A DNA stretch of 63,974 nucleotides, the filler included, from Cercozoa sp. M6MM (Eukaryota > Protista > Endomyxa: Ascetosporea), in NCBI GenBank assembly GCA_040357565.1. It is 15 parts of 15 records of this genome, joined end to end, with 100 filler letters (N's around TTAATTAATTAA, not from the genome) between each part and the next. Parts side by side here need not be neighbours in the genome. Positions count along the whole stretch, not along the records: positions 23,339 to 28,479 come from JBDODJ010000966.1; 14 more parts are not named here. One strand, given 5' to 3'. Made by a program: the position numbers and the translations under genes. Shown here in pieces: positions 5,794-28,619 of this stretch. The notes beneath the pieces were generated by a model. That model made no database searches, was not told the DNA's origin, and worked only from the letters and a program-made list of their open reading frames with translations. Every line of letters starts with the position of its first letter. Positions within the stretch are counted from its first letter, which is position 1.

Positions 5794-6050
5794 GTTTCCT
5801 GGCCGTGATGCTGCTGGTGTTTGCGTTGCTGGTGCCTGCGCAACGCTTCCAGCCGCGCAAGACTTTTGTACTTCCCTCTTACCCCCCTACCTACCCCCTC
5901 CCCTACCTACCCGCTCCCCTACTTACCCCCTTCTTACCCTAACCCCTGCAGGCACTGGCACTGGTGTGTCTGTACCTGGTGTTCTTCCTGCTGCAAGTGG
6001 CGCACTCCATCTGGTCCGTCGATGACGACTTCTCTGTGCACGGGCGGTGA
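5794..6050 (+). CDS. Cation/Ca2+ exchanger (NCLX/CCX-like) C-terminus
   Basis: FLAVMLLVFALLVPAQRFQPRKTF|ALALVCLYLVFFLLQV...* resembles the last two TM helices of NCLX/CCX (VP...F.L.R..G..L...Y). Confidence 0.6.
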
Positions 6051-6450
6051 CTTTGGAGGATCCGACTGGCTGGCACGTGCACTGATCGATCATGAGCCGA
6101 CTGGTCACGTGCGCTATTAGCAGGCTTTTGCTTTTCTTTGATACCGTATTGTAGCAAGAGGAACTTATCGTATGACCGACCAGTTCCGTTCATCAACTGC
6201 AAAGCACTGTAGTGAATCAACTAGTACTCAGTCCTAGTTGTACTCAGTCCTGGTACAGTAGAGAGGGTGTACTACCCTAAGCGGGCGGTAGATACCCATC
6301 CCACCAGATTGAACTAGTACTTGACCTCCGTGAGTTGGTTACTATCTAACGAGTAAGGTGATCAAACAATAGGCCGCGCCAGTCAACCAAGGCAGTGCTA
6401 GTAACGTAATTTGAATATTTCTTTAAAGACGAGACAAGGCATGTTGAAGC

Positions 6451-7703
6451 TCATGCGATGCGCTCGATGATGTGCAGGCCGCTGGCGGTGTCGACAATGC
6501 CGCTGATCTCGCCGACAGCGAGAGCGAAGGAGGCCTCTTCGAAGGCGGGCTGCATCTGGCCGCGCTGGAAGAAGCCGAGGTCGCCACCTCGGTGAGCCGA
6601 GTTGCAGTGCGACCGCTTGCGCGCGATCTCGTCGAAGCGCGCGCCGTCCTGCACGAGCTGCTCGCGAATGGCAGTCAGTGCCTCGCGTGCCTCCTCCTTG
6701 CTCCGTGTGACGCGCTTCTCGAGCCACGACTGTACTCATCAGTCAAGCACACGTGACATAACACAAAAGCAAGACTTTGCAAAGCTTGACGCACACTGGG
6801 TCGGCGCGAGTCGCGGTGCTTGATTAGAATGTGTCGCACCCGCACCTGCGTCACCTGAGCCAACGAGAAGCACTTTCAGATACAAGAAAGTTGAGTTGAA
6901 AGCAAGCTCAATTGAAAGCAAGTTGAGTTAAGCAAGCTCAGTTGAAGCAAACTGAACTCGTTCAGTAAAGAGTCCAGGAGAAAACTGGAGCAAAAACGGA
7001 CCTTTTGCTTTTTCAGGGCGGGCTCACTTGAGGAAGCATCTGGTTTCGGCTGTCTTCGTCGCACCACGGTTCGATAGACTCGTTCCGACGCAGCGAATCG
7101 AATCCTGATCCACAGGCAGAAACACATCAAAGGACAGGAAACAGAAGAAGGTGTCTCCCATTTCGGCAGAGCTCACCTTGCACCGTTCCGCAGGAGATAC
7201 CGCTCATGCGGCTTGAGTCGTTGGTTGTCCAGGAAGGTGCCGTGTCTGCTGCCTTTGCATTTCACAAGCCACAGTGACTCATCAAAAATACAAGAAACGT
7301 CAAAAATGCAAGAAGGATATACAGAAGCTAGAAAACAAAAAAAAAAACAAACCGAGATCGACGACGTAAACGTTGCCGCTTTTGCCGTGCAGCACCATGG
7401 CGTGCAATCGCGACAAGGTTTCGTTCTCACATACCTAGATTTTCAAGACTCCTGTAGTCAAACAGGAACTGTAAAAAAACGTACAACGTCGCATTTGTCG
7501 TCTCTGCCAAAGATGGTCACTTTCTTCTCTGACTGCAAGTGTCACTGCCACTCAAAGGTCCTCCCAGCTACCTCCAGTTAAAGACCAAACACCAACTCGA
7601 TCGTCTCAATGTCTTCGCCATCTTTGGTGACCTGGAAACGCGCCAGAATCCTGGGCGAAGGTTCGGCGCTCCAATCGGGAATCTCGGGCAACTCGACGGC
7701 CAT
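6451..7703 (-). CDS. FHA domain + Pin1-type parvulin peptidyl-prolyl isomerase
   Basis: FHA motifs IFGR, LSRLHA, DL-GSRHGTFLD. PPIase VRVRHILIKHRDSRRPSSW...SHCNSAHRGGDLGFFQRGQMQPAFEEASFALAVGEISGIVDTASGLHIIERIA*. Complete gene, about 6 introns. Confidence 0.92.
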
Positions 7704-7967
7704 TGCGAACGCTTGAATTCCAGACCCAGCTTCACAAAAGCAAAAATAAATGCAACGTTCGGCAACGCAAACGCCAGATGATTGGCAAAAAATACCAGCC
7801 CAACGAAACAAGCGAAAGAGTGTCTTACGCAAACTCTGACGTTTCGTGCTACGCTTTCAAAATGGTGGTCGTTGCTGGGGCTCAATGAAGCCATGAGCCC
7901 ATGGCTTGCTGGGTTTTTGTGGGCTATCGGCATTCAGAGTGGCGTAGGACTGTGTGCACAGTTTTAG

Positions 7968-10900
7968 ATGAAGGCCAGAGCATCAGATGTGCTCGATCTG
8001 CTTCATGCAGAGTTCGAACGCGACACAGCAATCAATGAAAAAGTCAGTTTTGTTTGCTTTTGCTTTGGACTCAAATATCTGTGTCCGCGCGTAGGAGAGC
8101 AGAGAAACGCCGCAAACCAAGGTCGGCCAGTTATTGAAAAGATCGAAGAAGTCTCGCCGATGGAAAGCGATCGAGTACTCTGTCTGTTTGTGCATCGGTG
8201 CTGTCATAAGTTGGTTGGTTGCAGCTGCACACTCCAGCAAGGCAGATTGGTGCTACACAAGCGAGGAAAGAATGTTACGATTGTTCTAAACTCCGAAACG
8301 CGTGTTGCTCCCGTTCCTGTACCAGTTCCCTGTGTTCGCGCCATGGTGGACTGATGTGCATGGGAGGTGTACTGCATGCAGAAAGACAAGTACGGCAGGG
8401 AAGGCGTCTTCAAGATCGAAACTGGCAGCGAAAAGATTGTTCTACAAGCCAACGCGACTGAGGTGTTTTCTTTCCTCTGTTCTTTTGCTTGTTCTTGTTT
8501 GTTTTGTTTGAAAAATGCGTGCAAATGCAGGCGCAACAGTGGGTGCGTGCACTGCAAGAGAGCGCGATTTTCGGCACCAGCAAGCGACCGTAGTTTTTGT
8601 TTCGATCTAATCTGACGCATGCTTACTTATTTTCTAGTCGACTGGGGGATTCGAAAGTGCAAGAAAAATACGAGCGACTGTGCGCTGCCATGGAAGGCTC
8701 CGTTATCGACTGTACTGTTCAGTTGTTCAGTTCGTCTTACAACAAACTTGTGATGCCTGTGTTTGTACAGTGGAGGAGGAAGACCAGCAGATCGCGACGT
8801 TTTCTTCGATGAACGCTGCTGTAACTCGCAGTTTCGTTTTGTTCTTGCTTTACCCTTTTTATTGTTTGAACTTTGAACAAAGGTGCTGGACGCTCGCGCG
8901 GACTACTTTGACAGCACGCAACTGGTACCGAGGCTGAGACACTAAAATGTCACTGTGTAGGCATGCTCCCTGTCAGTAGCACATTAACCTGACTGCCGGT
9001 GCCGACACTTTAACCTGCAGTTCGGTGCTGCCGCAGCTGCAGCAGGCCGTGTGTGCCACGTCGGACGCTCTCACCAGTCGCATACACACCATGTCGTTCT
9101 CCAACTGTGTGTTGCCTGTGGAATTTTATTGTGTTTAGACCATGTTTAGTGTGTGCGAATAGTATCTTCTCGCGAGTGCGCAAGAACTGATGGCGAAATC
9201 ACTGCATTGCACGCTTTCTTGGATTGTAAGCTTTCTTCAGTTCGTTCTTTTTTCAGTCTTTGAAAATCAGTGTTTTTTGAATCAATCGGTCTTTTTAACT
9301 CAGACCAAAACCAAGCTCAGTGCTGCGTCGGAAAGAGCGATGGAACACTGGCATTCTGCGATCTGCAAACAGGTTTGTTTTTGCAAACAAGGTTGTTTCT
9401 TTTTGTGAAATTTAATGTGGGTCCAACAGGAAATTTTACGCCAGTTGATATGGGCTCAGACGACCTGTGTAAAGCACTTTTATTTGACCAGTTTCTCGTT
9501 TTTTAGCAGTTAAACACAGTCAGGTTTGATGGAGCACCTCTACCTGGCACCTGGGTGTCCAAACAGTAGGTTTTCCTGTGTTTTTCGGTATGATCAACTG
9601 ATTCTTTCTTTTTTTTTCTAGGCGAGTCTGGGACGTCAGCGGCAACACTGGCGGGCGGCACGTGGCGGCTTGTGTTCGCGGCAATGTGGTGCTGTGTGAT
9701 GTGCAGCAGCAGCGCGGTATCACCGATTTGGTTGGTCTAACTGGCTGCTCAGTTTTTGTTCATTCAGTTTTTTCATTCAGTTTTTTCTTTCAGTCTTTGT
9801 TCGTTCAGTTTTTGTTCAGTCGCTTTTCCATTCAATTCAGTTTCTTTCGTTGAGTTTTTTCACATTCAATTTTCTCAGTCACGTTTTTGTTTTCTGTTTT
9901 TTCCATCGGTTTTTGACTGAGTTTGCATTCCCTATTTTCGTCCAGTTTATTCATACATTTTCTTCACTCAGTTTTGCTTCAGTTGTCGTATTTCGTTGCT
10001 TTTCAATACTCTTGTAGTCAGTGGATTGTTGATTCAGATCGTTTCTTCTGTTTGCTTCATTTTAACCCGTGTGTGGCAGTGTGGTGGCGAAACCCAGTGT
10101 CGTCGGCCGACGTGCTGTGTCTCGCCTGGGGCAGCACGACCACACTGGCTACTGTACCTTTTTGTTTAAGGCTGCGAATGTGTCCATTTGTACCAAACAT
10201 GGAAGGCCGGCAACTCTCAAGTGGTCAAGGTGCTCGACGTGCGCACGCGAAAGGCGACGTTTTCCGCTCTGGCTCACGGCGCTCCGGTACGTCCAGTCTG
10301 TACCATTGTCGAGGTCCATGTGTATCGTCCTGGTGTCTGTTCTGGTGTACCGTCCGAGTATACCGTCCGTCTTGTACAGGTGCGCAAGGTGGCCTGGAGT
10401 CCGGCCGAGTCGTACCTGCTTGCCAGTGCCGGCGATGACATGGTACACTCTCTCTCTCTCTCTCTCTCTGTATGTACTACCTGTACTGTCCATATGAACG
10501 GTTCGTATGGACGGTCCATGATGAACGGTTCGTATGGACGGTTCGTATGTAGGACATTTGCATCTGGGACGTGCGCGCCGGCGGCGAAAAAGCGCTGCTG
10601 CAGCGCGTGGCTGCGCACTCGGTGCGGTACCTTCTGGGGGGGTAAAGGGTAGGGGGTAAAACGGGGCTACGTAGGCACCGGTGACGGCACTAGCATTCGC
10701 GCCGTCGCACAGCGATCTACTCGTGTCGGGTGCACAGGATCGCACCTTCCGCTGGATCAACTGGTGTGTGTGTGTATGTGTGTATATGTGTGTTGTATAT
10801 GTGATGTGTATGTGTATGTGTATGTTTATGTTTATGTATGTGTATGTGTGTTATGTATGTGATGTGTATGTGTATGTGTATGTGTATGTATGTCTGTGTG

Positions 10901-12363
10901 TGTGTATACGTGTGCGCGTGTGTGTGTCTATACATTGGTATAGTATGTGTGTGAACGTATATGTATGTGTGTGGACGTATATGTATGTGTATTTCTGAAC
11001 TGAAATGTGTGTATGTATGTATCAATGTCTATCAGATACCTCCATCTGTATGTGTTCTGTAGATGTATCTATATATATATATATAAACATATATATGTAT
11101 TTATATGTATATTCCCAGAGACTTATGTGTACTAACAGGAGAGAAGACCTGGCGCCCCGTCACATTGTCGCCTCCGTGTCGGTATCCACGAATTCTCGTA
11201 TTTTCCCAGTCACTCGGTCAGAGAGAAAGATACGGGAAATCGGCAGACCACGTGGCCCGTCGTCGGCGTCGATTTCTGTGACGATTTCGGCGTTTGCGCC
11301 GCCGCTGCCGACGGCACGCTGCACCTGCAGGTTTACCCCCCCCCCCCCCCCACCCCTTTACCCTGCTTACCTTCCTCTTCGCCCCCATTTACCCCCTTCC
11401 CCCAGAGAGTGAGACCGGAGCTGGTGGACGCCATGGCACCGCGTGTGCCGCCTTCTGGTTCGTCTTTGTCTCTGCCTGTGTCTGTACATGTATAGATATA
11501 TTTGTGTATGTCGATATGTATATATGTATATGTGTATATGTATGTGTATATGTGTATATGTATATGTGTGTATATATGCATGTATGGATGTATGTCTTGA
11601 CAGACCAGGCCACCGACGACCACGCTGAACAGCAAGGTAGCCATATATACATACACATGTGTATATATGTATCCTTATTCATATACACTATGTGCATATA
11701 ATGTAATATATATGATGCAGTCGTGAGTGCGCAATACCGACGCGACATTGCCGCCGCCGGTGCCTTCTCTTATCTATACATATAAGGATATATGCATATA
11801 AGGATATATGCATATAAGGATGTATGCATATATAGGGGTATCTGCATTTATAGTGATATACATATAAGAATAAGGACATATAGATAATGTAATATACATA
11901 CATGTATGTATGTATACATGTCTATATGCACATATATGTGTGCATGCATGTACATGGCAGTTCTGGCGGCCACACGTTGCTGCGAAAACTGGTGGAAACG
12001 CCTCCTGCTGCAAGATAGGTGTCTTGCTCTATGGGGGGGGTGAATAGGGCGTGTGAATAGGGAGAGGGGGGTAAAACCGTGGCCAGTAGCGAGGAGCTGC
12101 AGTGCCGCAGCGAGCGCGTCTTGGCGTTGCTGCAGACTTCGCTGGACGACTTCTGGCGTCTCCTGAGTGACGACGCCGATTTCGATCTCGGTAACTTTTT
12201 CACACATCACTTGACACGTGCCAACTGAGCACACGTGTGTCCACTGAACACGTGCCAACTGAGTGAATGAAAGCAGAGGTGCCACACAGCACAATGGCGC
12301 GTCTGGCGGCGGCGAATTTTCGCATTCGACTGCGGCGACATCTCCTGCTCGAGAATGTTCAAG
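7968..12363 (+). CDS. PH-domain + WD40-repeat protein, many exons, 3' truncated
   Basis: PH-like: GQLLKRSKKSRRWK..., FKIETGSEKIVLQA..., AQQWVRAL. WD40: VRKVAWSPAESYLLASAGDDM|DICIWDVR, VTALAFAPSHSDLLVSGAQDRTFR. Start could be slightly upstream. Confidence 0.7.
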
Positions 12364-12523
12364 GTTCGTTCTGGGGGGGGGGGNNNNNNNNNNNNNNNNN
12401 NNNNNNNNNNNNNNNNNNNNNNNNNNNTTAATTAATTAANNNNNNNNNNNNNNNNNNNNNNNNNNNNNNNNNNNNNNNNNNNNCCTACCCCCTACCCCCT
12501 ACCCCTACCCCTACCCCCGGGCA

Positions 12524-13296
12524 GCACTCGAACGACCTGCTGAACGAGTTTCGTGGCGTCAGTGCGACGAAACTCGATTTCGACCTTTCTGTCAGTGTGC
12601 GTTTTCTTGTGTGTGTGTGTGTGTGTGTCTGTGTGTCTGTGTGTCTGTGTCTGTGTCTGTGTCTGTGTCTGTCTGTGTTTGTGTCTGTGTGTGTGTAAGG
12701 GGGGGTAAAGGAGGATACAACTGAGATTGTGCGCAGGTGCTGCAGCAGGGCGCTTGGCCCTTCCGCGCGGACCGAGTGCCGGTCAATCTGCCGCCGACGG
12801 TGCGCGACTGCTTCGAGCACTACCGTCACTTCTACTGTCAGCAGGTGTGTTTAACCCCCCCCTCATCCCTCTCTTACCCCACCCACTCCCCTTCGCAGAA
12901 GCATCCGAACCGTCGGTTGAAACTGGCGACTGGACGCGGTCAAGCCGAGGTAGATTCGTTCTTTGTCCGTGTTTTTTTTTGTGTATTTGTGTTGTGTGTC
13001 CGCGCGGACAGGTGTTGATCCGATTCCCAACAAAGGCCAAGCTGCTGGTGGTGTCGACTTGGCAGATGTGCGTCCTGTCGCTCTTCAATCACAAGACCGT
13101 GTGGTCCTTTGGCGACATCTGCGCGCAATTACAGGTAGGCTGGGGAGGAGAGGGGGCAAAGAGGGTAACATGGGGGGTATAATTGTGTGTGTATGTCATG
13201 TAGATCCCGGCGGAGGCACTAGAGCCGCACCTGTTGTCACTTGTGCATCCTGACGTCGCCATTCTACTCAAGCGGCCCGGTGGTCGGTCACTGGAG
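12524..13296 (+). CDS. Cullin (CUL3/CUL1-like), cullin-homology region exons
   Basis: VQVLQQGAWP, FEHYRHFY..HPNRRLKL..G.AE, LVVSTWQMCVLSLFN, LEPHLLSLV...LLKRP. Confidence 0.9.
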
Positions 13297-23338: not shown

Positions 23339-23394
<56 letters not shown>

Positions 23395-23406
23395 TTGTTT
23401 TGCAGG

Positions 23407-24597
23407 TCGGCACAAGATGTTAGGATAGCTGCGCACCGCTTGGCGTGGGGCAAATGGACTCACTGTGGTCAGGTACGTTCTTGAATTTCTCTTAATCTTC
23501 CTATTGACACACCTCCATTATACACAGTCATGTGTGGCGCCTGACTACGTGCTTGTTCACGTACCATTGACTACTCCTCTGAGGTGCTTTAGTCTGTAGA
23601 ATTGAGTCGTTCAGCGAGATGTGCAAGCGAAACTGCTGCGTGAAATTCGACGAGTTTACCGCGAGTTTTATCGGATAGATCAGGATGCTGATATTGGTAC
23701 ATGCGTGTCTCGTTGTGTTGTGTTAAAGATTGTGGGTTGTTGCCTGTCTGCCTTCTTCAGTTGATGAAGGCGGTGATGACATCAGCAGCAGTAGCGACTT
23801 TGGGCGCATCGTCAATGTGCGGCACTGCGATCGACTAGCGTTGCTGCTGCGCGAGACCAAAGGCCGCATCGTTCTCGGTGGCCGCGTGCGAGTGGCTGAC
23901 AAGTACGTCGCGCCGACTATCGTCCTGCTCGAGGACGCGAACGACCCGCTGTAATGGTTTCTCCTGTACTGTTCTGTGTCTGCTGGTCTCATGTCAGCTG
24001 TTGCTCTCTCAGAATGGAAGAGGAGCTCCTGGGTCCGATTCTGCCAGTCATCTGCTACGACACGCTGCAGGAGGCAGTGGACGTCGTCAATTCGCGCGGT
24101 GCGCCTCTCGCATTGTACGTGTTCGCTTCGAACACACGGGCGGCCGATTTCGTACTCTACGCTTGTTGTACTGTATCATAGTTAGTACCGCATGTGTGTT
24201 GGACAGGTGATCTCGAGAACGCAGAGTGGCGGCGTGTGCGTCAACGACACTGGAGTGCACGTGGCCGCTCCAACCTTGCCTTTTGGTGGTACTGGCGCGA
24301 GTGGCTACGGCTACTTGCACGGCAGGGCTGGTTTCGACGAGTTGTCCCACCTGCGAGGAGTGCTGCGACGCAAACTGCGTGATGAGGCTGTGTTTGGTAC
24401 TCGCCTTTGTCTCTCCCTCCCACGTCTCTTTCGACTCTGGTACAGGTGTGCGGTACCCTCCCTTCACGCGTGGCAAGGTGAACGTTATGCGACACGCCTG
24501 GCGCAGCGGTCCTGGTCAGTCGCCTCTCATGCACGTGCTTGGCACAACGCGCGCCTTCCTGCAGTACCAGCTCGGTCAGGGAGCTTCCGCTCTTTAG
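23407..24597 (+). CDS. ALDH3: Aldehyde dehydrogenase, ALDH3 family (5' truncated)
   Basis: RLAWGKWTHCGQ|SCVAPDYVL (catalytic Cys), DFGRIVNVRH, EELLGPILP, PLALYVF, LPFGGTGASGYGYLHG..FDELSH, RYPPFT. Confidence 0.93.
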
Positions 24598-24939
24598 CGT
24601 AGCATTTGCTTTCTATAAAGTCAACTTCGACCTTGTTTCTGGGAGAGTTGGGATTGCTGGGCCTCGGCCCTGGCCTGTGCGCTTGGTCAGAAGAAAAAAT
24701 CTCCTTTTTTCGTGCAACAGACCTTTGTGCGCTGCTTTAATGTCCAAAATTCGGCCCAAATCGCATGAGCGATCGGCGCCCTGCTATGATCGATCAATGA
24801 CCCAGTCACCACCTCCGCTTTGCTTTGGGTCCGTTGCCCTCTTGCTTTGTGAGAAGTTCGTTCAGACCCAGCACCGTCACTTCTATTGCACTTGAATTGC
24901 TGTCCCTGCCAATAAAATAAACTGCACCAATTCAGTACC

Positions 24940-26196
24940 ATGCCCATTCTTGTATATCACATTCTCAAGCTGTTTTCCCAGTATCGTATTGATCAATAAA
25001 TACTGTAAATTTACCTCGGTATCAATATCTTAATATCAGGGAGAAATTAAGCCGTTTTCTGGGAACTACGCACCAGTCGGATACGCGTTCTGCCATGGCC
25101 AGATCGTTTTAATCAACGAATATCCGGTAAATCTTGTCGATTCAGTGTGAGAAATTGTGGATTTGCTAACACGCAAAGAAAGTACAGGGTGTATACGTAC
25201 CCTACAGGCACTCCACAGCGTCCTCGGCTCATCTTTTGGCGGCGACGGCATTTCTTACTTTCAACTGCCGGACCTTCGTTACCGAGTAGCCGTTGGCGCA
25301 GGTGCCGAGCCCGGACACATTCGTAAGTTCCAACTCAACCAATAGACTTCCACTACGTTTGTACTGTACAATACAGTGTTTTATTTCTAAATTTACAAGT
25401 AGCCGTGCCGCTCGGAGCCTACTTTGGATTAGACCAACATACTTATGGCGTGCAAGTTAGCTCGAGCCAGACACTGGACATTGACATCCCCGCCACAGCG
25501 GTTCCGTCGTTTACGCCACAGGTAACATTCGCCGGAGACAGCACCAACCCCACAGGTAAAGTTCGCTGCTGCTGTTAGATATTTCAAAGAATATATTTAG
25601 TCAATTATTTTATATCATTCATATAAACTTATGTACCTCAATATAATATACTCTGTAACTTTACAGTAAAGTTGAGATACTATTGTATACCCCTGTACTA
25701 TATATGTCCTAATTTATATCTAAATTTACTTTGACCAGGTAGAATTAACATTTAAATTTTATTGAGAGCATGTAAATTTAAATTTAAAAACAGGCAGTTT
25801 CTCACCTGGTCGAATTCTGCTCGACACTGGTCTGAGCTTCTCCGACCCGTGCGTTTTGTTTAGCTTCGCCTTTACAGACAGGAAGTACTATGTTGTGTTT
25901 AGTGCTGATGCCGTGGGTACCCAAGCGATGGACCTGAACACGTTCCCCGGTGTCACTCCGACTGATGCCAGTGCTCGCACGACTGTGGAGGTAGAATTTA
26001 AAATCAAATTTACTGTAGATGTCAAAATCAGTCAAATATCTATGTGTGAGTAGAACCCAGTATGCTCTTTAATTTTTCTTTAATTTGGCAGGTGACCATA
26101 GGTCTGACGGGCGAAATCACCGTGGACAAGCACCAGCCTTCTCTTGGCGTCTCGTACATCATTGCGATGGAAGGCGACTACCCGATGCGCAGCTGA
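24940..26196 (+). CDS. Phage tail-collar domain protein (bacterial 'microcystin-dependent'/tail-fibre family) with spliceosomal introns, about 222 aa
   Basis: Exons 24940-24951, 25040-25126, 25208-25322, ~25403-25555, 25794-25990, 26092-26196 total 669 nt, all GT-AG and in frame. They give MPILGEIKPFSGNYAPVGYAFCHGQIVLINEYPALHSVLGSSFGGDGISYFQLPDLRYRVAVGAG...HQPSLGVSYIIAMEGDYPMRS*. This matches the collar pattern GEI..F.G..AP.G...C.GQ......ALF..LG..YGGDG...F.LPDLRGR and the family C-terminal QP.L...IIA.EG..P.R. Confidence 0.9.
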
Positions 26197-26249
26197 ACTA
26201 CTGACCTCAACCGACTGTTATAGATAAACTTATATAATTAAATTTACTA

Positions 26250-28468
26250 TCAGTGTTTCGACAAATTTCCGTTTTCGCCACGGTTCCCCAGGTGTGTGGT
26301 GATTCTCCCCAACGCTTCTGCGGGGGGTTTGCGACAGATTGCGCAATGCGACAGAACGAGGCGAGACATCTCAACAAGCACGGTATCTGTTGAGGTACCT
26401 GCTTTCGGTAAGCGGGTTTTTCTTGAAGCAGTTTTGAGCTGCTCGCCACCCTACCAAACACAGGGTATGCAAAGCTAGGCTACCCCCTTGGTGAAGCACT
26501 TTGCATCTTTTTCTCTGGCCGAAAGAAAATCTGTTATTTCCGTGGCCAATGTAAACTTAGATAAACCAGGCATTTGATGGGTTTCGAAACATTGTTTAGA
26601 CGCCTTTAATGGCTTTTAAAAGAGCAACAGAGTAACATTCCGAACCCTCAATTTCAGATACGATTTGTTCGCATATTATGTGGAAACCAGTTCCCCTTTG
26701 TCTTGTGAATGGTTTTGTCTTGTGCATTAGCCTGGAATGCTAGCTGCTGTGACCCGCCGCGTTGGTCTAATCATTTCGGAGAAAATGGACCTGCGCGCAC
26801 TTTCACCTCCATTCGGCTGCTTTTGGAGGGAGTGTACGTTTCGAATCGGCTGCTTGAATAAAAATCCACTTCTATCGTCAGTGACAAACTCAGCAAAGAA
26901 GGTGTATTAACCTTGTAGGCGTCGCTGTTGCTACAAAAATGTCCGTAAAACACCGCCAAAACACCGGAAACACTCATACAGCAGGCCAGGGTACATATGC
27001 CACGAGAACGCGATGTCACGGCAGGCGCAGAATCGATCCAGTTCATTCCGAAAACAATCGTTCCCTGTGCAGAATTCATAAAGCTAGCAGCAACAACACG
27101 CATACTGTCCAAGTAACGAAAGTAGAGACCATCTTGGGAACGAAGAGCAGCACTGCCACATGCATATATCAGTCCGCGATACCATGGACAGGAGAAGGTT
27201 TAGTGAATGAAGATACCGAGAACGACAGTACAGAGTATCCATATTGCTGCTTGTTCGATAACTTGCACCTGAATCGCCACCGAGGACATTAGTGCACTTG
27301 CGATGGAAACGAGCGACAAGAATGCAACGCCAACGATGAGAGCAGCGATCTGCTTTGATTCTCTGAAGTCTTCCCAGGGATAATATACCGACATGAAGGA
27401 CACAGTGTATACTGTACTAGTGCTGTATCATTTTTAGACAAGAAAGTATACTCGCAAACGCTTTTCGAGTAGACCAACTCAATCCGAGCGAGTACAAGAC
27501 AATGCAGGCGCCAAACATCACGTTTCCCATGAAGAAAATGTCTGTTCAGGGGTGATCAGTACAGTACTGATACTTCAACTGGTAACATCGGCATGTCGAC
27601 TTGATAGAACTCACTCACCCCAATTGTCTGCGCGACAAGCGAGCCTTCCGACGTTTGAAGACTCGTCTTGTCTCTATACAGTTTCAGTTTTGACCCCCAA
27701 TTTCCGAAGTTACGAATATTACAGGTATATTCTGACTGTGAAATTGTTACCTTTGCCACGATTTTCAGAGGAGACACGATCGCCCACATTACGTTCAGCG
27801 CCAAACTCAGCACTACAACTGCGAGTACGATTTTCACCAAGCGACCATCCCTAATAATCACCGTTTTCAGTTTTTTTCGGCGGAAAATCTTGTCGATGCG
27901 CCAAGCTTTAGCAGTGATGGGCACAAAGGCCAGAACAAAGCCAGTTCCCAAGAGAAACGGCAGCGATTGACACGCTGCGTTCAACTGCCCGCGCGTGTTC
28001 AGTCCAAGAGTGTCATCTAAGCCGATCACGATAGCGGAGGTGTAGCCGACTAAGAGTCCTACTAAAGTGAATGACAGCATCTTTGGCGACGCTGCTTTTA
28101 TTGATTGCTCCTGCAGAAAGGCAGAAATACAGAGCAGACAGTATAACAAACAGGGTAAATTTACTGTACATTTCGGTGTGCATAGACGATATACAAGTTC
28201 GCCAAAGTGACTGCCATTCTGGATCAGGACACACAACAGCCTGTATGTAAGGGCACTAAATTCAGTGTTTGCATCTTACCCGACGATAGAAAGAGCCGTG
28301 AAGGTTGCCCAGACTCCGACAGAGGAGCGTTTCACGTCGACTTGCACTGATGCAAGATCTTAGGGGATGAATCTAAGTTTAGAGCACCGCAAACTTACTA
28401 TCAGGTTTTAACGCAAACACCGACACAGTTTTTGGGTCGCTGTCAGACCTTTGTAGAACGCATTTCCT
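26250..28468 (-). CDS. Class C (GABA-B-like, 7tm_3) G-protein-coupled receptor; 5' truncated, 3' end approximate
   Basis: TM1 ..LSIVG|MAVTLANLYIVYAHR|EQSIKAASPKM...; C...FLLGTGFVLAFVPITAKAWRIDKIF...VIIRD..L; FRESKQI; LFVPK. Confidence 0.85.
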
Positions 28469-28619
28469 GGGGGGGGGGGNNNNNNNNNNNNNNNNNNNNN
28501 NNNNNNNNNNNNNNNNNNNNNNNTTAATTAATTAANNNNNNNNNNNNNNNNNNNNNNNNNNNNNNNNNNNNNNNNNNNNGGTAAAGAGGGGGGTAAAGGG
28601 GGGTAAACTGCAATGGCGA

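What the first reader, a model, noticed from the sequence alone, without database searches (positions are those of the whole stretch)
24940..26196. Complete bacterial/phage-type tail-collar protein gene carrying spliceosomal introns in a eukaryote
Seen: six exons join over canonical GT-AG introns into an uninterrupted protein of about 222 aa. The N-terminus is a clear phage tail-collar domain (GEIKPFSGNYAPVGYAFCHGQ...ALHSVLGSSFGGDG...FQLPDLR). The C-terminus is QPSLGVSYIIAMEGDYPMRS. Two introns interrupt the collar domain itself (after MPIL and after NEYP). The gene shares a contig, with no gap, with intron-containing ALDH3 and class C GPCR genes, which argues against bacterial contamination. 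Known: this N- and C-terminal motif pair defines the small bacterial 'microcystin-dependent protein'/tail-fibre family, related to trimeric phage short tail fibres, often in tandem clusters, with unresolved function. Inference: an old horizontal transfer that was kept and intronised. It could serve as a fibre, adhesion or extrusome-like structural protein. No signal peptide is visible. The ORF track shows only fragments of it.
Basis: partly seen in the sequence, partly recalled or inferred. Interest (0 to 1): 0.9.

Follow-up and report, generated by a model that had tools for sequence, protein, structure and literature searches.

The report
Intron-split bacterial tail-fibre gene in a eukaryote
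A small gene of a bacterial and phage family (tail-collar or "microcystin-dependent" proteins) sits between two ordinary eukaryotic genes, is cut by five GT-AG introns and still reads as a complete 223-residue protein, so it is most likely a gene taken from bacteria and kept by a eukaryote.

Summary
Six exons (24940-26196, + strand) join over five GT..AG introns into 223 codons.

- **Domain match.** Exon 2 matches Pfam Collar profile positions 1-29. Exon 3 matches positions 30-56. Each half scores above the gathering threshold on its own.
- **Introns.** Every intron carries an in-frame stop. Intron GC is 0.24-0.41; exon GC is 0.48-0.60, leaving out the 12-nt exon 1 (0.42).
- **Linkage.** An independent contig links ALDH3 exons to collar exons 1-4 with no differences. 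Depth is even across all three genes.
- **Closest relatives.** These are about 220-aa MdpB/"tail fiber" proteins without the HxH motif, of Bacteroidota type (for example Chryseobacterium sp. PS-8, 221 aa). Exon-wise identity is 67%, 58% and 48% for exons 2, 3 and 6. The match is co-linear from the first to the last residue.
- **Central region.** The central 126 residues (exons 4-5) have no detectable relative in 1.84 billion proteins.
- **Trimer.** A model supports a homotrimer for the Chryseobacterium relative (0.85 against 0.04 for the best control). The contact motifs are kept in exons 3 and 6.

My reading is a bacterium-to-eukaryote transfer that later became fully host-like and encodes a trimeric, surface-binding collar-fold protein.

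Not shown: expression (no RNA run exists), the donor, and the host lineage.

The parts
24940..24951 (+). Exon 1: ATG plus 3 codons (MPIL). The donor follows at 24952 (GTATAT).
   Evidence: An in-frame stop lies 9 codons upstream of the ATG (read). The four residues before the conserved G match the bacterial N-termini, which run M-x-x-L/F-I/M-G.
24952..25039 (+). Intron 1: 88 nt, GT..AG, phase 0, GC 0.31. Holds TACTGTAAATTTAC.
25040..25126 (+). Exon 2: 29 aa, the first half of the Collar domain.
   Evidence: PF07484 profile 1-29, 36.2 bits; long-subfamily HMM positions 6-33, 34.2 bits; 18/27 identical to P0123.
25127..25207 (+). Intron 2: 81 nt, GT..AG, phase 0. Its length is a multiple of 3, but it has an in-frame TGA 22 nt past the donor.
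   Evidence: It splits the Collar profile between positions 29 and 30.
25208..25322 (+). Exon 3: 38 codons plus 1 nt. Second half of the Collar domain and the LPDLRYRVAVGAG stretch.
   Evidence: PF07484 profile 30-56, 31.7 bits; positions 35-70, 45.1 bits; 21/36 identical to P0123. Its LR.RV.VG motif matches the best-defined trimer contact of P0123.
25323..25399 (+). Intron 3: 77 nt, GTAAGT..AG, phase 1, GC 0.32.
25400..25555 (+). Exon 4: 156 nt (51 whole codons at 25402-25554). First part of the central region, which cannot be aligned to relatives.
   Evidence: No Pfam, NCBIfam, PHROG or PDB match. Only a non-significant alignment to model positions 71-99.
25556..25793 (+). Intron 4: 238 nt, GTAAAG..AG, phase 1, GC 0.24. 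Its last 55 nt begin with an internal AG|GTAGAA that resembles the donor of intron 5.
   Evidence: (repeat families D1 and D11). The Logan contigs break at an inverted repeat at 25773-25788.
25794..25990 (+). Exon 5: 197 nt (65 whole codons at 25796-25990). Second part of the central region. It is needed to bring exon 6 back into frame.
   Evidence: No relative at E<=1e-3 in 1.84e9 representative proteins apart from one spurious repeat protein. None in metagenome or viral contigs.
25991..26091 (+). Intron 5: 101 nt, GTAGAA..AG, phase 0, GC 0.29. Holds AAATTTACTGTA.
26092..26196 (+). Exon 6: 34 aa plus TGA. Carries the family's conserved C-terminal strand (QPSLGVSYIIAMEGDYPMRS).
   Evidence: positions 193-220 of 220, 27.0 bits, so the match ends at the last model position; 12/25 identical to P0123. 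PSLG..Y corresponds to trimer-contact residues 203-209 of P0123.
23406..24597 (+). Upstream neighbour: 3' part of an ALDH3A2-like aldehyde dehydrogenase gene. At least 7 exons, with introns of 48-64 nt; stop at 24595-24597.
   Evidence: PF00171 profile 358-409 and 410-459 in separate ORFs. Exon boundaries are from my reading; five of the exons were translated.
26771..28279 (-). Downstream neighbour, tail to tail: class C GPCR gene (7tm_3), several exons; stop at 26771.
   Evidence: PF00003, 70.8 bits; the nearest Atlas cluster is eukaryotic 7tm_3, most often Bacillariophyta. Boundaries are from my reading.
26288..26615 (.). Multi-copy repeat in the intergenic space between the collar gene and the GPCR gene.
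   Evidence: depth 6200-12600 against about 875 elsewhere. Several 45-nt contig variants lie at 26420-26464. No Rfam or tRNA match.

Best explanation
This is a nuclear gene of a eukaryote, probably a protist. It came by horizontal transfer from a bacterium, or from that bacterium's phage or prophage. The source family is the small tail-collar proteins (Pfam Collar PF07484; COG4675 'MdpB, microcystin-dependent protein'; annotated 'tail fiber protein').

The closest sampled relatives are the roughly 220-residue forms without the HxH motif, found in Bacteroidota-type genomes.

Since arrival, the gene has taken on the host's coding GC. It has also gained five spliceosomal introns that look like the host's own, and it has kept a complete reading frame.

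By homology, the protein should fold like the receptor-binding tip of a phage tail fibre without the shaft. Three chains intertwine. The N-terminal collar and the last C-terminal strand pack together at the base. The chain runs out and doubles back, so the central region forms the distal, ligand-binding part.

The base motifs are kept here, while the central 126 residues have diverged beyond recognition. That is the pattern expected for a binding tip that has changed its target.

I infer a homotrimeric binding protein for a surface polymer, most likely a glycan such as bacterial LPS or a cell-wall sugar.

- **Shown here:** gene structure, family membership, linkage to host genes, closest subfamily.
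- **Inferred:** splicing, trimer formation by this protein, binding function, donor.
For: Family and completeness
- The two Collar halves score above threshold and are contiguous in the profile.
- Against a 168-position HMM of 224 bacterial members, E2 maps to 7-34, E3 to 36-68 and E6 to 143-167.
- Against a 220-position HMM of 22 long HxH-less members, E2 maps to 6-33 (34.2 bits), E3 to 35-70 (45.1) and E6 to 193-220 (27.0), ending at the model's last position.
- The unaligned stretch is 122 model positions against 126 residues here, so the gene is co-linear and the same size.

Closeness
- Median best-domain scores for E2/E3/E6 are 22.5/29.4/14.3 for the Bacteroidota-type set. They are 16.3/20.4/4.3 for 347 other bacterial and viral members.
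- Identity to Chryseobacterium sp. PS-8 'tail fiber protein' is 67%, 58% and 48%.
- Every hit that NCBI names is bacterial.

Eukaryotic setting
- One Logan contig spans 23500-25788, covering ALDH exons and collar exons 1-4, with 0 differences.
- Depth is 842-1000 across all three genes.
- The neighbours are intron-split Aldedh and 7tm_3 genes.

Introns
- All are GT..AG, and all have in-frame stops.
- Exon GC is 0.48-0.60 (the 12-nt exon 1: 0.42) against intron GC 0.24-0.41. GC3 is 0.50-0.74, against 0.33-0.73 in the host exons.
- The motifs AAATTTAC (8 seen, 0.15 expected) and TACTGTA (8 seen, 0.60 expected; 0 of 1000 within-intron shuffles reach this) are shared with introns of both neighbours.

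Fold and assembly
- A bacterial member matches PDB 8kec long tail fiber (E 1e-8) and T4 gp12 1ocy (E 4e-4).
- In such tips the chain doubles back from the head to the collar (PMC12609058).
- A homotrimer of P0123 scored ipSAE 0.85 against a best control of 0.04. Partner pLDDT was 87-89 and the runs agree in at least 95% of contacts. That mark was reached by 21 of 30 solved homo-pairs and 0 of 23 single chains.
- The lowest-error contacts in that model are residues 57-64 with 203-209 of the next chain. These correspond to LRYRVAVG in E3 and PSLGVSY in E6.

Function of relatives
- Three virophage Collar proteins form a heterotrimer that binds LPS (PMC12724248).
Against: - No RNA run holds this DNA, so no junction is confirmed and expression is unknown.
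- No signal peptide is seen, which fits poorly with a secreted surface binder.
- The central region has no homologue, so its fold and ligand are unknown.
- The His residues invariant in the common bacterial type (H91, H93, H145, and N147) are not kept. E6 has V and K at the last two. Many bacterial members of the closest subfamily lack them too.
- The trimer model is for a bacterial relative, not this protein, and may reflect memory of solved fibre tips.
- 'Closest' rests on three short exons and on samples chosen through two bridging queries. No tree was built.
- The host lineage is only hinted at.
Confidence: 0.7

Rival explanations
1. Same gene and same fate, but the donor was a virus of eukaryotes (a virophage, or a giant virus integrated in the host genome) and not a bacterium or phage.
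For: - Virophages carry Collar-domain tail proteins, often three in a row (PMC12724248, PMC10385804).
- The virophage OLV and its giant-virus host OLPV have them (PMC3671162).
- Virophages can integrate into protist genomes (cited in PMC12724248).
- One of the better single matches (L104/P0002) lies on a 57.8-kb viral contig.
Against: - The 103 family members from viral contigs score lower than the bacterial ones: medians for E2/E3/E6 are 13.3/19.5/1.7 against 19.9/23.1/6.8.
- L104 belongs to the same subfamily as chromosomal Bacteroidota genes.
- The 5.1-kb piece holds no capsid, integrase or other viral gene. The flanking ORFs have no Pfam hit.
- I could not fetch reference virophage proteins, so this rival was tested only weakly.
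Confidence: 0.13
2. A transferred gene that is no longer used: an unexpressed relic, or a model whose central exons 4-5 are not really coding.
For: - No RNA evidence.
- Exons 4-5 have no homologue anywhere.
- GC1/GC2/GC3 periodicity in E5 is weak, at 0.52/0.51/0.58.
- No signal peptide.
- The family's metal-binding His residues are lost.
Against: - The 223 codons stay open across six exons.
- The conserved C-terminal strand comes into frame only if both E4 (156 nt) and E5 (197 nt) are spliced as modelled (my frame arithmetic).
- The central length matches the closest subfamily, 126 against 122.
- The trimer-contact motifs are intact.
- Exon GC stands clearly above intron GC for E4 and E5 (0.56 and 0.54 against 0.24-0.32).
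Confidence: 0.12
3. Not a recent or lineage-specific transfer: a member of a wider, vertically inherited eukaryotic gene family that has gone unnoticed or is already annotated.
For: - My searches could not see eukaryotic full-length relatives. Exon queries are barred from long targets, and hits carry no taxonomy.
- Intron density equals that of the host genes, which fits long residence.
Against: - E5 finds nothing in 1.84e9 representatives, a library built from public genomes and metagenomes.
- No paper in the library links the tail collar family with eukaryotic genes or introns.
- All named relatives are bacterial.
Confidence: 0.04
4. Bacterial contamination or a chimeric assembly join.
For: The family is overwhelmingly bacterial, and only one DNA run holds the stretch. 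That run may be the source of the assembly.
Against: - Five introns with in-frame stops break the ORF. Bacteria have no such introns.
- A single contig joins ALDH exons to collar exons 1-4 with 0 differences, and depth is even.
- The contig breaks lie inside intron 4 and at a repeat, not at the gene's borders.
Confidence: 0.01

Closest known systems
The ~220-aa HxH-less MdpB / 'tail fiber protein' subfamily of Bacteroidota type (e.g. NCBI 'tail fiber protein [Chryseobacterium sp. PS-8]', P0123, 221 aa; JGI 'microcystin-dependent protein' P0070, 222 aa)
   Same: - Same length (223 against 219-222 aa).
- The start lies 4-5 residues before the conserved G.
- The Collar domain is at the very N-terminus.
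- GYAFCHGQ, LPDLR.RV.VG.G and QPSLG..YII..EG.YP.R are kept.
- The match runs to the last residue.
- No HxH motif in most of these bacterial members (4 of the 22 have one) or here.
   Different: - Five spliceosomal introns.
- Eukaryotic neighbours.
- A central 126 residues that cannot be aligned.
- Host-like GC.
Common bacterial MdpB (COG4675) genes: three tandem ~170-aa paralogues (e.g. Deinococcus sp. KNUC1210 plasmid, Paenibacillus sp. 37 plasmid pART37)
   Same: N-terminal Collar and C-terminal strand.
   Different: - Those carry invariant HxH and H.N motifs and are shorter.
- They come as triplets.
- Here there is a single gene, no such His residues, and lower scores.
Receptor-binding tips of phage T4 fibres (gp12, PDB 1ocy; gp37) and PDB 8kec long tail fiber
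   Same: - Collar fold.
- The chain doubles back so that the C-terminus returns to the collar.
- Trimer.
- The variable distal part binds the receptor (PMC12609058).
   Different: - No shaft and no baseplate-binding domain: the protein begins at the collar.
- No HxH metal sites.
- Sequence similarity is limited to the collar.
Virophage tripartite tail proteins (DSLV2; PMC12724248)
   Same: Small Collar-domain proteins in a eukaryote-associated setting, with LPS binding shown for the trimer.
   Different: - Those are three adjacent viral genes forming a heterotrimer.
- Here there is one intron-bearing host gene.
- No direct sequence comparison was possible.

Membership tests
Pfam Collar (PF07484) domain | HMM match above the gathering score (24 bits) over the whole 57-position profile | tested here: met
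   E2 36.2 bits at profile 1-29; E3 31.7 bits at profile 30-56. Each half passes alone, and the two are contiguous.
MdpB / COG4675 small tail-collar proteins | Collar domain at the extreme N-terminus (M plus 4-5 residues, then G-x-I) | tested here: met
   MPIL then GEIK, against MEELMGTIK or MAQPYVGEIR in bacteria.
MdpB / COG4675 small tail-collar proteins | Conserved C-terminal strand (QP.L.LNYII..G.YPSR) ending the protein | tested here: met
   E6 aligns to positions 143-167 of 168 and 193-220 of 220; 12/25 identical.
MdpB / COG4675 small tail-collar proteins | HxH on the outgoing strand and H.N before the C-terminal QP (invariant in the common type) | tested here: not met
   One search gives the invariants H91, H93, H145 and N147. 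One search shows V and K at the last two, and no significant alignment at the first two. The closest subfamily mostly lacks them too, so this argues against the common type, not against the family.
MdpB / COG4675 small tail-collar proteins | Tandem cluster of (usually three) paralogues | tested here: not met
   a single copy between ALDH3 and GPCR genes within the 5.1-kb piece. The rest of the genome was not available.
MdpB / COG4675 small tail-collar proteins | Trimer assembly | tested here: inconclusive
   One search supports a homotrimer of the bacterial relative P0123 (0.85 against 0.04). This protein itself could not be modelled, because the exons were not joined.
Phage tail fibre proper (T4 gp12/gp37 type) | Long N-terminal shaft and baseplate- or fibre-attachment domain ahead of the collar | tested here: not met
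   the ORF starts 4 codons before the collar, with an in-frame stop 9 codons upstream of the ATG. An upstream ATG at 24797 with a GTGAGA donor would be out of frame with E2.
Horizontally acquired eukaryotic gene | Physical linkage to native eukaryotic genes on one molecule | tested here: met
   (contig record 1 spans 23500-25788; even depth).
Horizontally acquired eukaryotic gene | Spliceosomal introns confirmed by transcripts | not testable with these tools
   no RNA run holds the stretch. In silico support only.
Horizontally acquired eukaryotic gene | Nests within donor-domain sequences in a tree and is absent from related eukaryotes | tested here: inconclusive
   Exon-wise scores put Bacteroidota-type proteins closest. 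No tree was built because the spliced row was not made. The eukaryotic distribution could not be searched.

The most novel reading that the evidence does not exclude
A protist has domesticated a phage-tail-fibre-type trimeric receptor-binding protein taken from Bacteroidota that it eats or lives with. It has rebuilt the binding tip and uses the protein to recognise bacterial or other cell surfaces, for prey capture, symbiont handling or defence. The five introns were gained quickly from a genome-specific intron-generating element marked by the AAATTTAC and TACTGTA motifs, with the intron ends copied from one intron to the next.
Probability: 0.12. Interest if true: 0.8.

Novelty: new variant of a known kind. 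Interest (0 to 1): 0.6.

Why it matters
The tail-collar family is known from bacteria, phages, virophages and giant viruses. I found no paper in the held library describing a nuclear, intron-bearing copy in a eukaryote.

If the gene is expressed, it would be a clean case of a phage-style receptor-binding module reused by a eukaryotic cell. The assembly base is conserved and the binding tip has been rewritten.

The gene is also a compact test bed for intron gain. It must have arrived intron-free, yet it now has one intron per 134 coding bases, matching its neighbours. Its introns share sequence blocks with each other and with a neighbour's intron.

The function of the bacterial MdpB family is itself unresolved, so a eukaryotic copy under different constraints could help.

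Tried and rejected
Searches that found nothing useful
- **Exon 5 (65 aa) against 1.84e9 representatives.** The only hit was a 1024-aa repeat protein. It scored 26 bits per repeat by BLASTP and shares no family, so I judged it spurious.
- **Exon 5 in metagenome and viral contigs.** Pattern hits, but no relative.
- **ESM Atlas on exon 5.** Only unnamed clusters, with recognition below the mark.
- **PDB with exons 2, 3, 4 and 5.** Nothing meaningful.
- **NCBIfam.** No hit.
- **PHROGs.** One weak 'tail protein' hit for E3.
- **Dev_Cell_Death hit of E5.** Weak (14.6 bits against a cut-off of 27.8), treated as chance.

Models
- **AF2 monomer of the closest bacterial relative.** Poor (pLDDT 54), so no fold search was run on it.

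Host lineage
- The GPCR ORF found no relative within the length window. Only the Atlas hint remains.

Other checks
- **DSLV2 virophage record.** Not in the phage collection.
- **Alternative gene models.** The second donor at 25522 (repeat D6), skipping E5, or joining E3 or E4 straight to E6 all put E6 out of frame. An upstream ATG at 24797 followed by a hydrophobic stretch and a GTGAGA donor at 24849 would be phase 1 and runs into a stop in E2.
- **Flanking ORFs between the genes.** No Pfam match.
- **Rfam and tRNA scans.** Empty.

Joined step left out
There is therefore no whole-protein search, tree, fold or complex of the spliced product.
Full report
**What is there**

The piece 23339-28479 holds three genes. 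On the + strand, the 3' part of an ALDH3A2-like gene ends at 24597. Pfam Aldedh matches profile 358-409 and 410-459 in separate ORFs. Reading, I find at least six short introns of 48-64 nt.

On the minus strand, a class C GPCR gene ends at 26771. Its 7tm_3 match (70.8 bits) is again split over exons.

Between them lies the reported gene. From the sequence and exon-by-exon translation, the model is:
- E1 24940-24951
- E2 25040-25126
- E3 25208-25322
- E4 25400-25555
- E5 25794-25990
- E6 26092-26196

This gives 672 nt, or 223 codons. There are five GT..AG introns of 88, 81, 77, 238 and 101 nt, in phases 0, 0, 1, 1 and 0. The two split codons give Leu and Gly.

**Is it more than chance?**

Yes, for four reasons.

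- *The domain join is seamless.* Exon 2 alone matches Pfam Collar at profile 1-29 (36.2 bits). Exon 3 alone matches profile 30-56 (31.7 bits). Both exceed the gathering score of 24, and the two pieces abut exactly in the profile.
- *The frame only works with all exons.* The family's conserved C-terminal strand in exon 6 comes into frame only if E4 (156 nt) and E5 (197 nt) are both spliced as modelled. Other donor and acceptor choices that I checked break the frame.
- *The introns interrupt the ORF.* Each exon's frame hits a stop 21-61 nt into the following intron, so there is no uninterrupted ORF.
- *Composition separates exons from introns.* Exon GC is 0.48-0.60 (the 12-nt exon 1: 0.42) and intron GC is 0.24-0.41. 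GC3 is 0.50-0.74, inside the range of the neighbours' exons.

**Is it in the eukaryotic genome?**

The only public run holding the stretch is a DNA run that may be the assembly's source. Its Logan contigs are still a separate assembly of the reads:
- One contig covers 23500-25788, from ALDH exons to collar exon 4, with no differences.
- Depth is 842-1000 over all three genes.
- The contig breaks lie at an inverted repeat inside intron 4 and at a multi-copy repeat at about 26288-26615, not at the gene's borders.

Contamination or a chimeric join is therefore very unlikely. No RNA run exists, so splicing and expression are untested.

**Which family, and how close?**

Bacterial relatives on plasmids are the classic triplets of about 170-aa 'tail fiber protein' genes.

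I built an HMM of 224 such proteins from 80 bacterial genomes. It aligns E2 to positions 7-34, E3 to 36-68 and E6 to 143-167. E4 and E5 do not align. The invariant His and Asn positions of this common type are not kept.

Ranking 347 bacterial and viral members exon by exon showed none that stood out, except one protein without HxH on a viral contig (L104).

I used that protein, and then a 222-aa relative (P0070), as bridging queries. They led to a subfamily that is clearly closer. Best-domain medians for E2/E3/E6 are 22.5/29.4/14.3, against 16.3/20.4/4.3 for the earlier sets.

A 220-position HMM of 22 'long' members, most of them without HxH, gives 34.2, 45.1 and 27.0 bits. E6 ends at the model's last position. 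The unaligned gap is 122 positions, against 126 residues here.

So the eukaryotic gene is a full-length, co-linear, same-size homologue of this subfamily. Identity to the named member, Chryseobacterium sp. PS-8 'tail fiber protein' (221 aa), is 18/27, 21/36 and 12/25 for E2, E3 and E6.

All hits that NCBI names are bacterial. Among the closest and in the first list they are mostly Bacteroidota; the second list also names Caldilineaceae, Paenibacillus and Allosphingosinicella.

The central part (E4 and E5) has no detectable relative:
- in 1.84 billion representative proteins;
- in metagenome or viral contigs;
- in the PDB;
- even against the subfamily profile.

**How it probably works**

A common-type bacterial member matches solved fibre tips: 8kec (E 1e-8) and T4 gp12 1ocy (E 4e-4). 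In these tips the chain leaves the collar, runs out to a small head that touches the receptor, and doubles back to the collar (PMC12609058). From memory, Pfam's own note on this family says the same: a conserved third strand about 100 residues downstream, with the function residing in the variable stretch between.

The pattern here matches that layout. The N-terminal collar and the last strand are conserved, and the middle is not.

A three-copy model of the Chryseobacterium protein scored ipSAE 0.85, against 0.04 for the best of three controls. Partner pLDDT was 87-89, and the runs agree in at least 95% of contacts. That mark was reached by 21 of 30 solved homo-pairs and 0 of 23 single chains. 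The job differs from the calibration, which used two copies, and the score may partly reflect memory of solved fibres.

The lowest-error contacts in the model join residues 57-64 to 203-209 of the next chain. These are the LR.RV.VG and PSLG..F/Y motifs that exons 3 and 6 keep.

I therefore expect a homotrimer whose distal, lineage-specific part binds some surface polymer. The one biochemical precedent in a eukaryote-linked setting is the virophage DSLV2 trimer, which binds cyanobacterial LPS (PMC12724248).

Three things speak against a simple secreted lectin:
- no signal peptide is visible;
- the metal-binding His residues are absent;
- the ligand is unknown.

**Origin**

I favour transfer from a bacterium, or its prophage, of Bacteroidota type.

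A eukaryotic-virus donor is a real rival. Virophages and giant viruses carry this domain (PMC3671162, PMC10385804, PMC12724248). However, the viral-contig members I sampled are on the whole more distant, and no viral gene lies nearby. I could not fetch reference virophage proteins.

The host is unknown. The GPCR exon's nearest Atlas cluster is eukaryotic, most often diatoms. The high intron density of the ALDH gene, though, does not look diatom-like (my own knowledge).

**Introns**

The gene must have arrived without introns. It now has one per 134 coding bases, similar to its ALDH neighbour.

Four of its five introns carry AAATTTAC and/or TACTGTA. AAATTTAC occurs 8 times against 0.15 expected, and TACTGTA 8 times against 0.60. 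None of 1000 within-intron dinucleotide shuffles reaches either count. The motifs also occur in introns of both neighbours.

Intron ends also resemble one another. The 3' end of intron 3 resembles an inner site of intron 4. The 5' end of intron 5 resembles an internal AG|GTAGAA in intron 4 (families D1 and D11).

This shows the introns are of the host's kind. It also hints at copying or a mobile source, which I could not test without the genome.

**Limits**

There is no whole-protein search, tree, fold or complex of the spliced product, and closeness rests on three short exons.

**Verdict**

Horizontal transfer followed by intron gain is well supported in silico. Expression, donor, host and function remain open.

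This is a new variant of a known family in an unexpected setting, and I score its interest at 0.6.

Noticed in passing
window 25001-25014, 25389-25396, 25722-25729, 25772-25779, 26006-26017, 26240-26247, 28155-28168; TACTGTA also at 24169, 25362, 25662, 27410, 27560: Two short motifs, AAATTTAC (GTAAATTTAC is a palindrome) and TACTGTA, recur in introns of all three genes and just after the collar stop codon. They are far more frequent than within-intron shuffles give: 8 against 0.15 and 8 against 0.60. On the gene strand, TACTGTA lies 18-32 nt before the acceptor in four introns. It may be a branch-site-like signal or a trace of a common intron source.
   Followed up: partly
window 25737-25793 and 25989-26011; 25380-25396 and 25713-25729: Intron 4 looks composite. 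Its last 55 nt start with an internal AG|GTAGAATT, which is 83% like the donor region of intron 5. An inner 17-mer is 94% like the 3' end of intron 3. This suggests tandem or copied intron units, or a recursive splice site.
   Followed up: no
window 26288-26615: A multi-copy dispersed repeat lies between the collar gene and the GPCR gene. Depth is 6200-12600 against about 875, with several variant 45-mers at 26420-26464. No Rfam, tRNA or Pfam match.
   Followed up: partly
window 25513-25532 and 25547-25566: A 20-nt near-duplicate (85%) lies 34 nt apart, and each copy holds CAG|GTAA. The second copy is the donor of intron 4. The first would be an out-of-frame alternative donor.
   Followed up: partly
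window 24598-24939: Only 342 nt separate the ALDH stop from the collar ATG. An AATAAA lies at 24911-24916, 24 nt before the ATG. The 3' end of one gene and the promoter and 5' UTR of the next must therefore share this short space.
   Followed up: no
window 23339-23390: A (CA)n microsatellite lies at the left edge of the piece, inside an ALDH intron.
   Followed up: no
P0022, P0064, P0086, P0135, P0209: Some bacterial members of the closest subfamily carry an N-terminal signal-peptide-like or membrane-anchor-like extension ahead of the collar. Most members, and the eukaryotic gene, do not. Many others in the hit lists are two or three collar units fused in one protein.
   Followed up: no
L104 (IMG/VR contig of 57.8 kb), 5989-6438: A 150-aa collar protein without the HxH motif lies on a viral contig. 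This shows that HxH-less forms also travel on viruses or prophages.
   Followed up: partly
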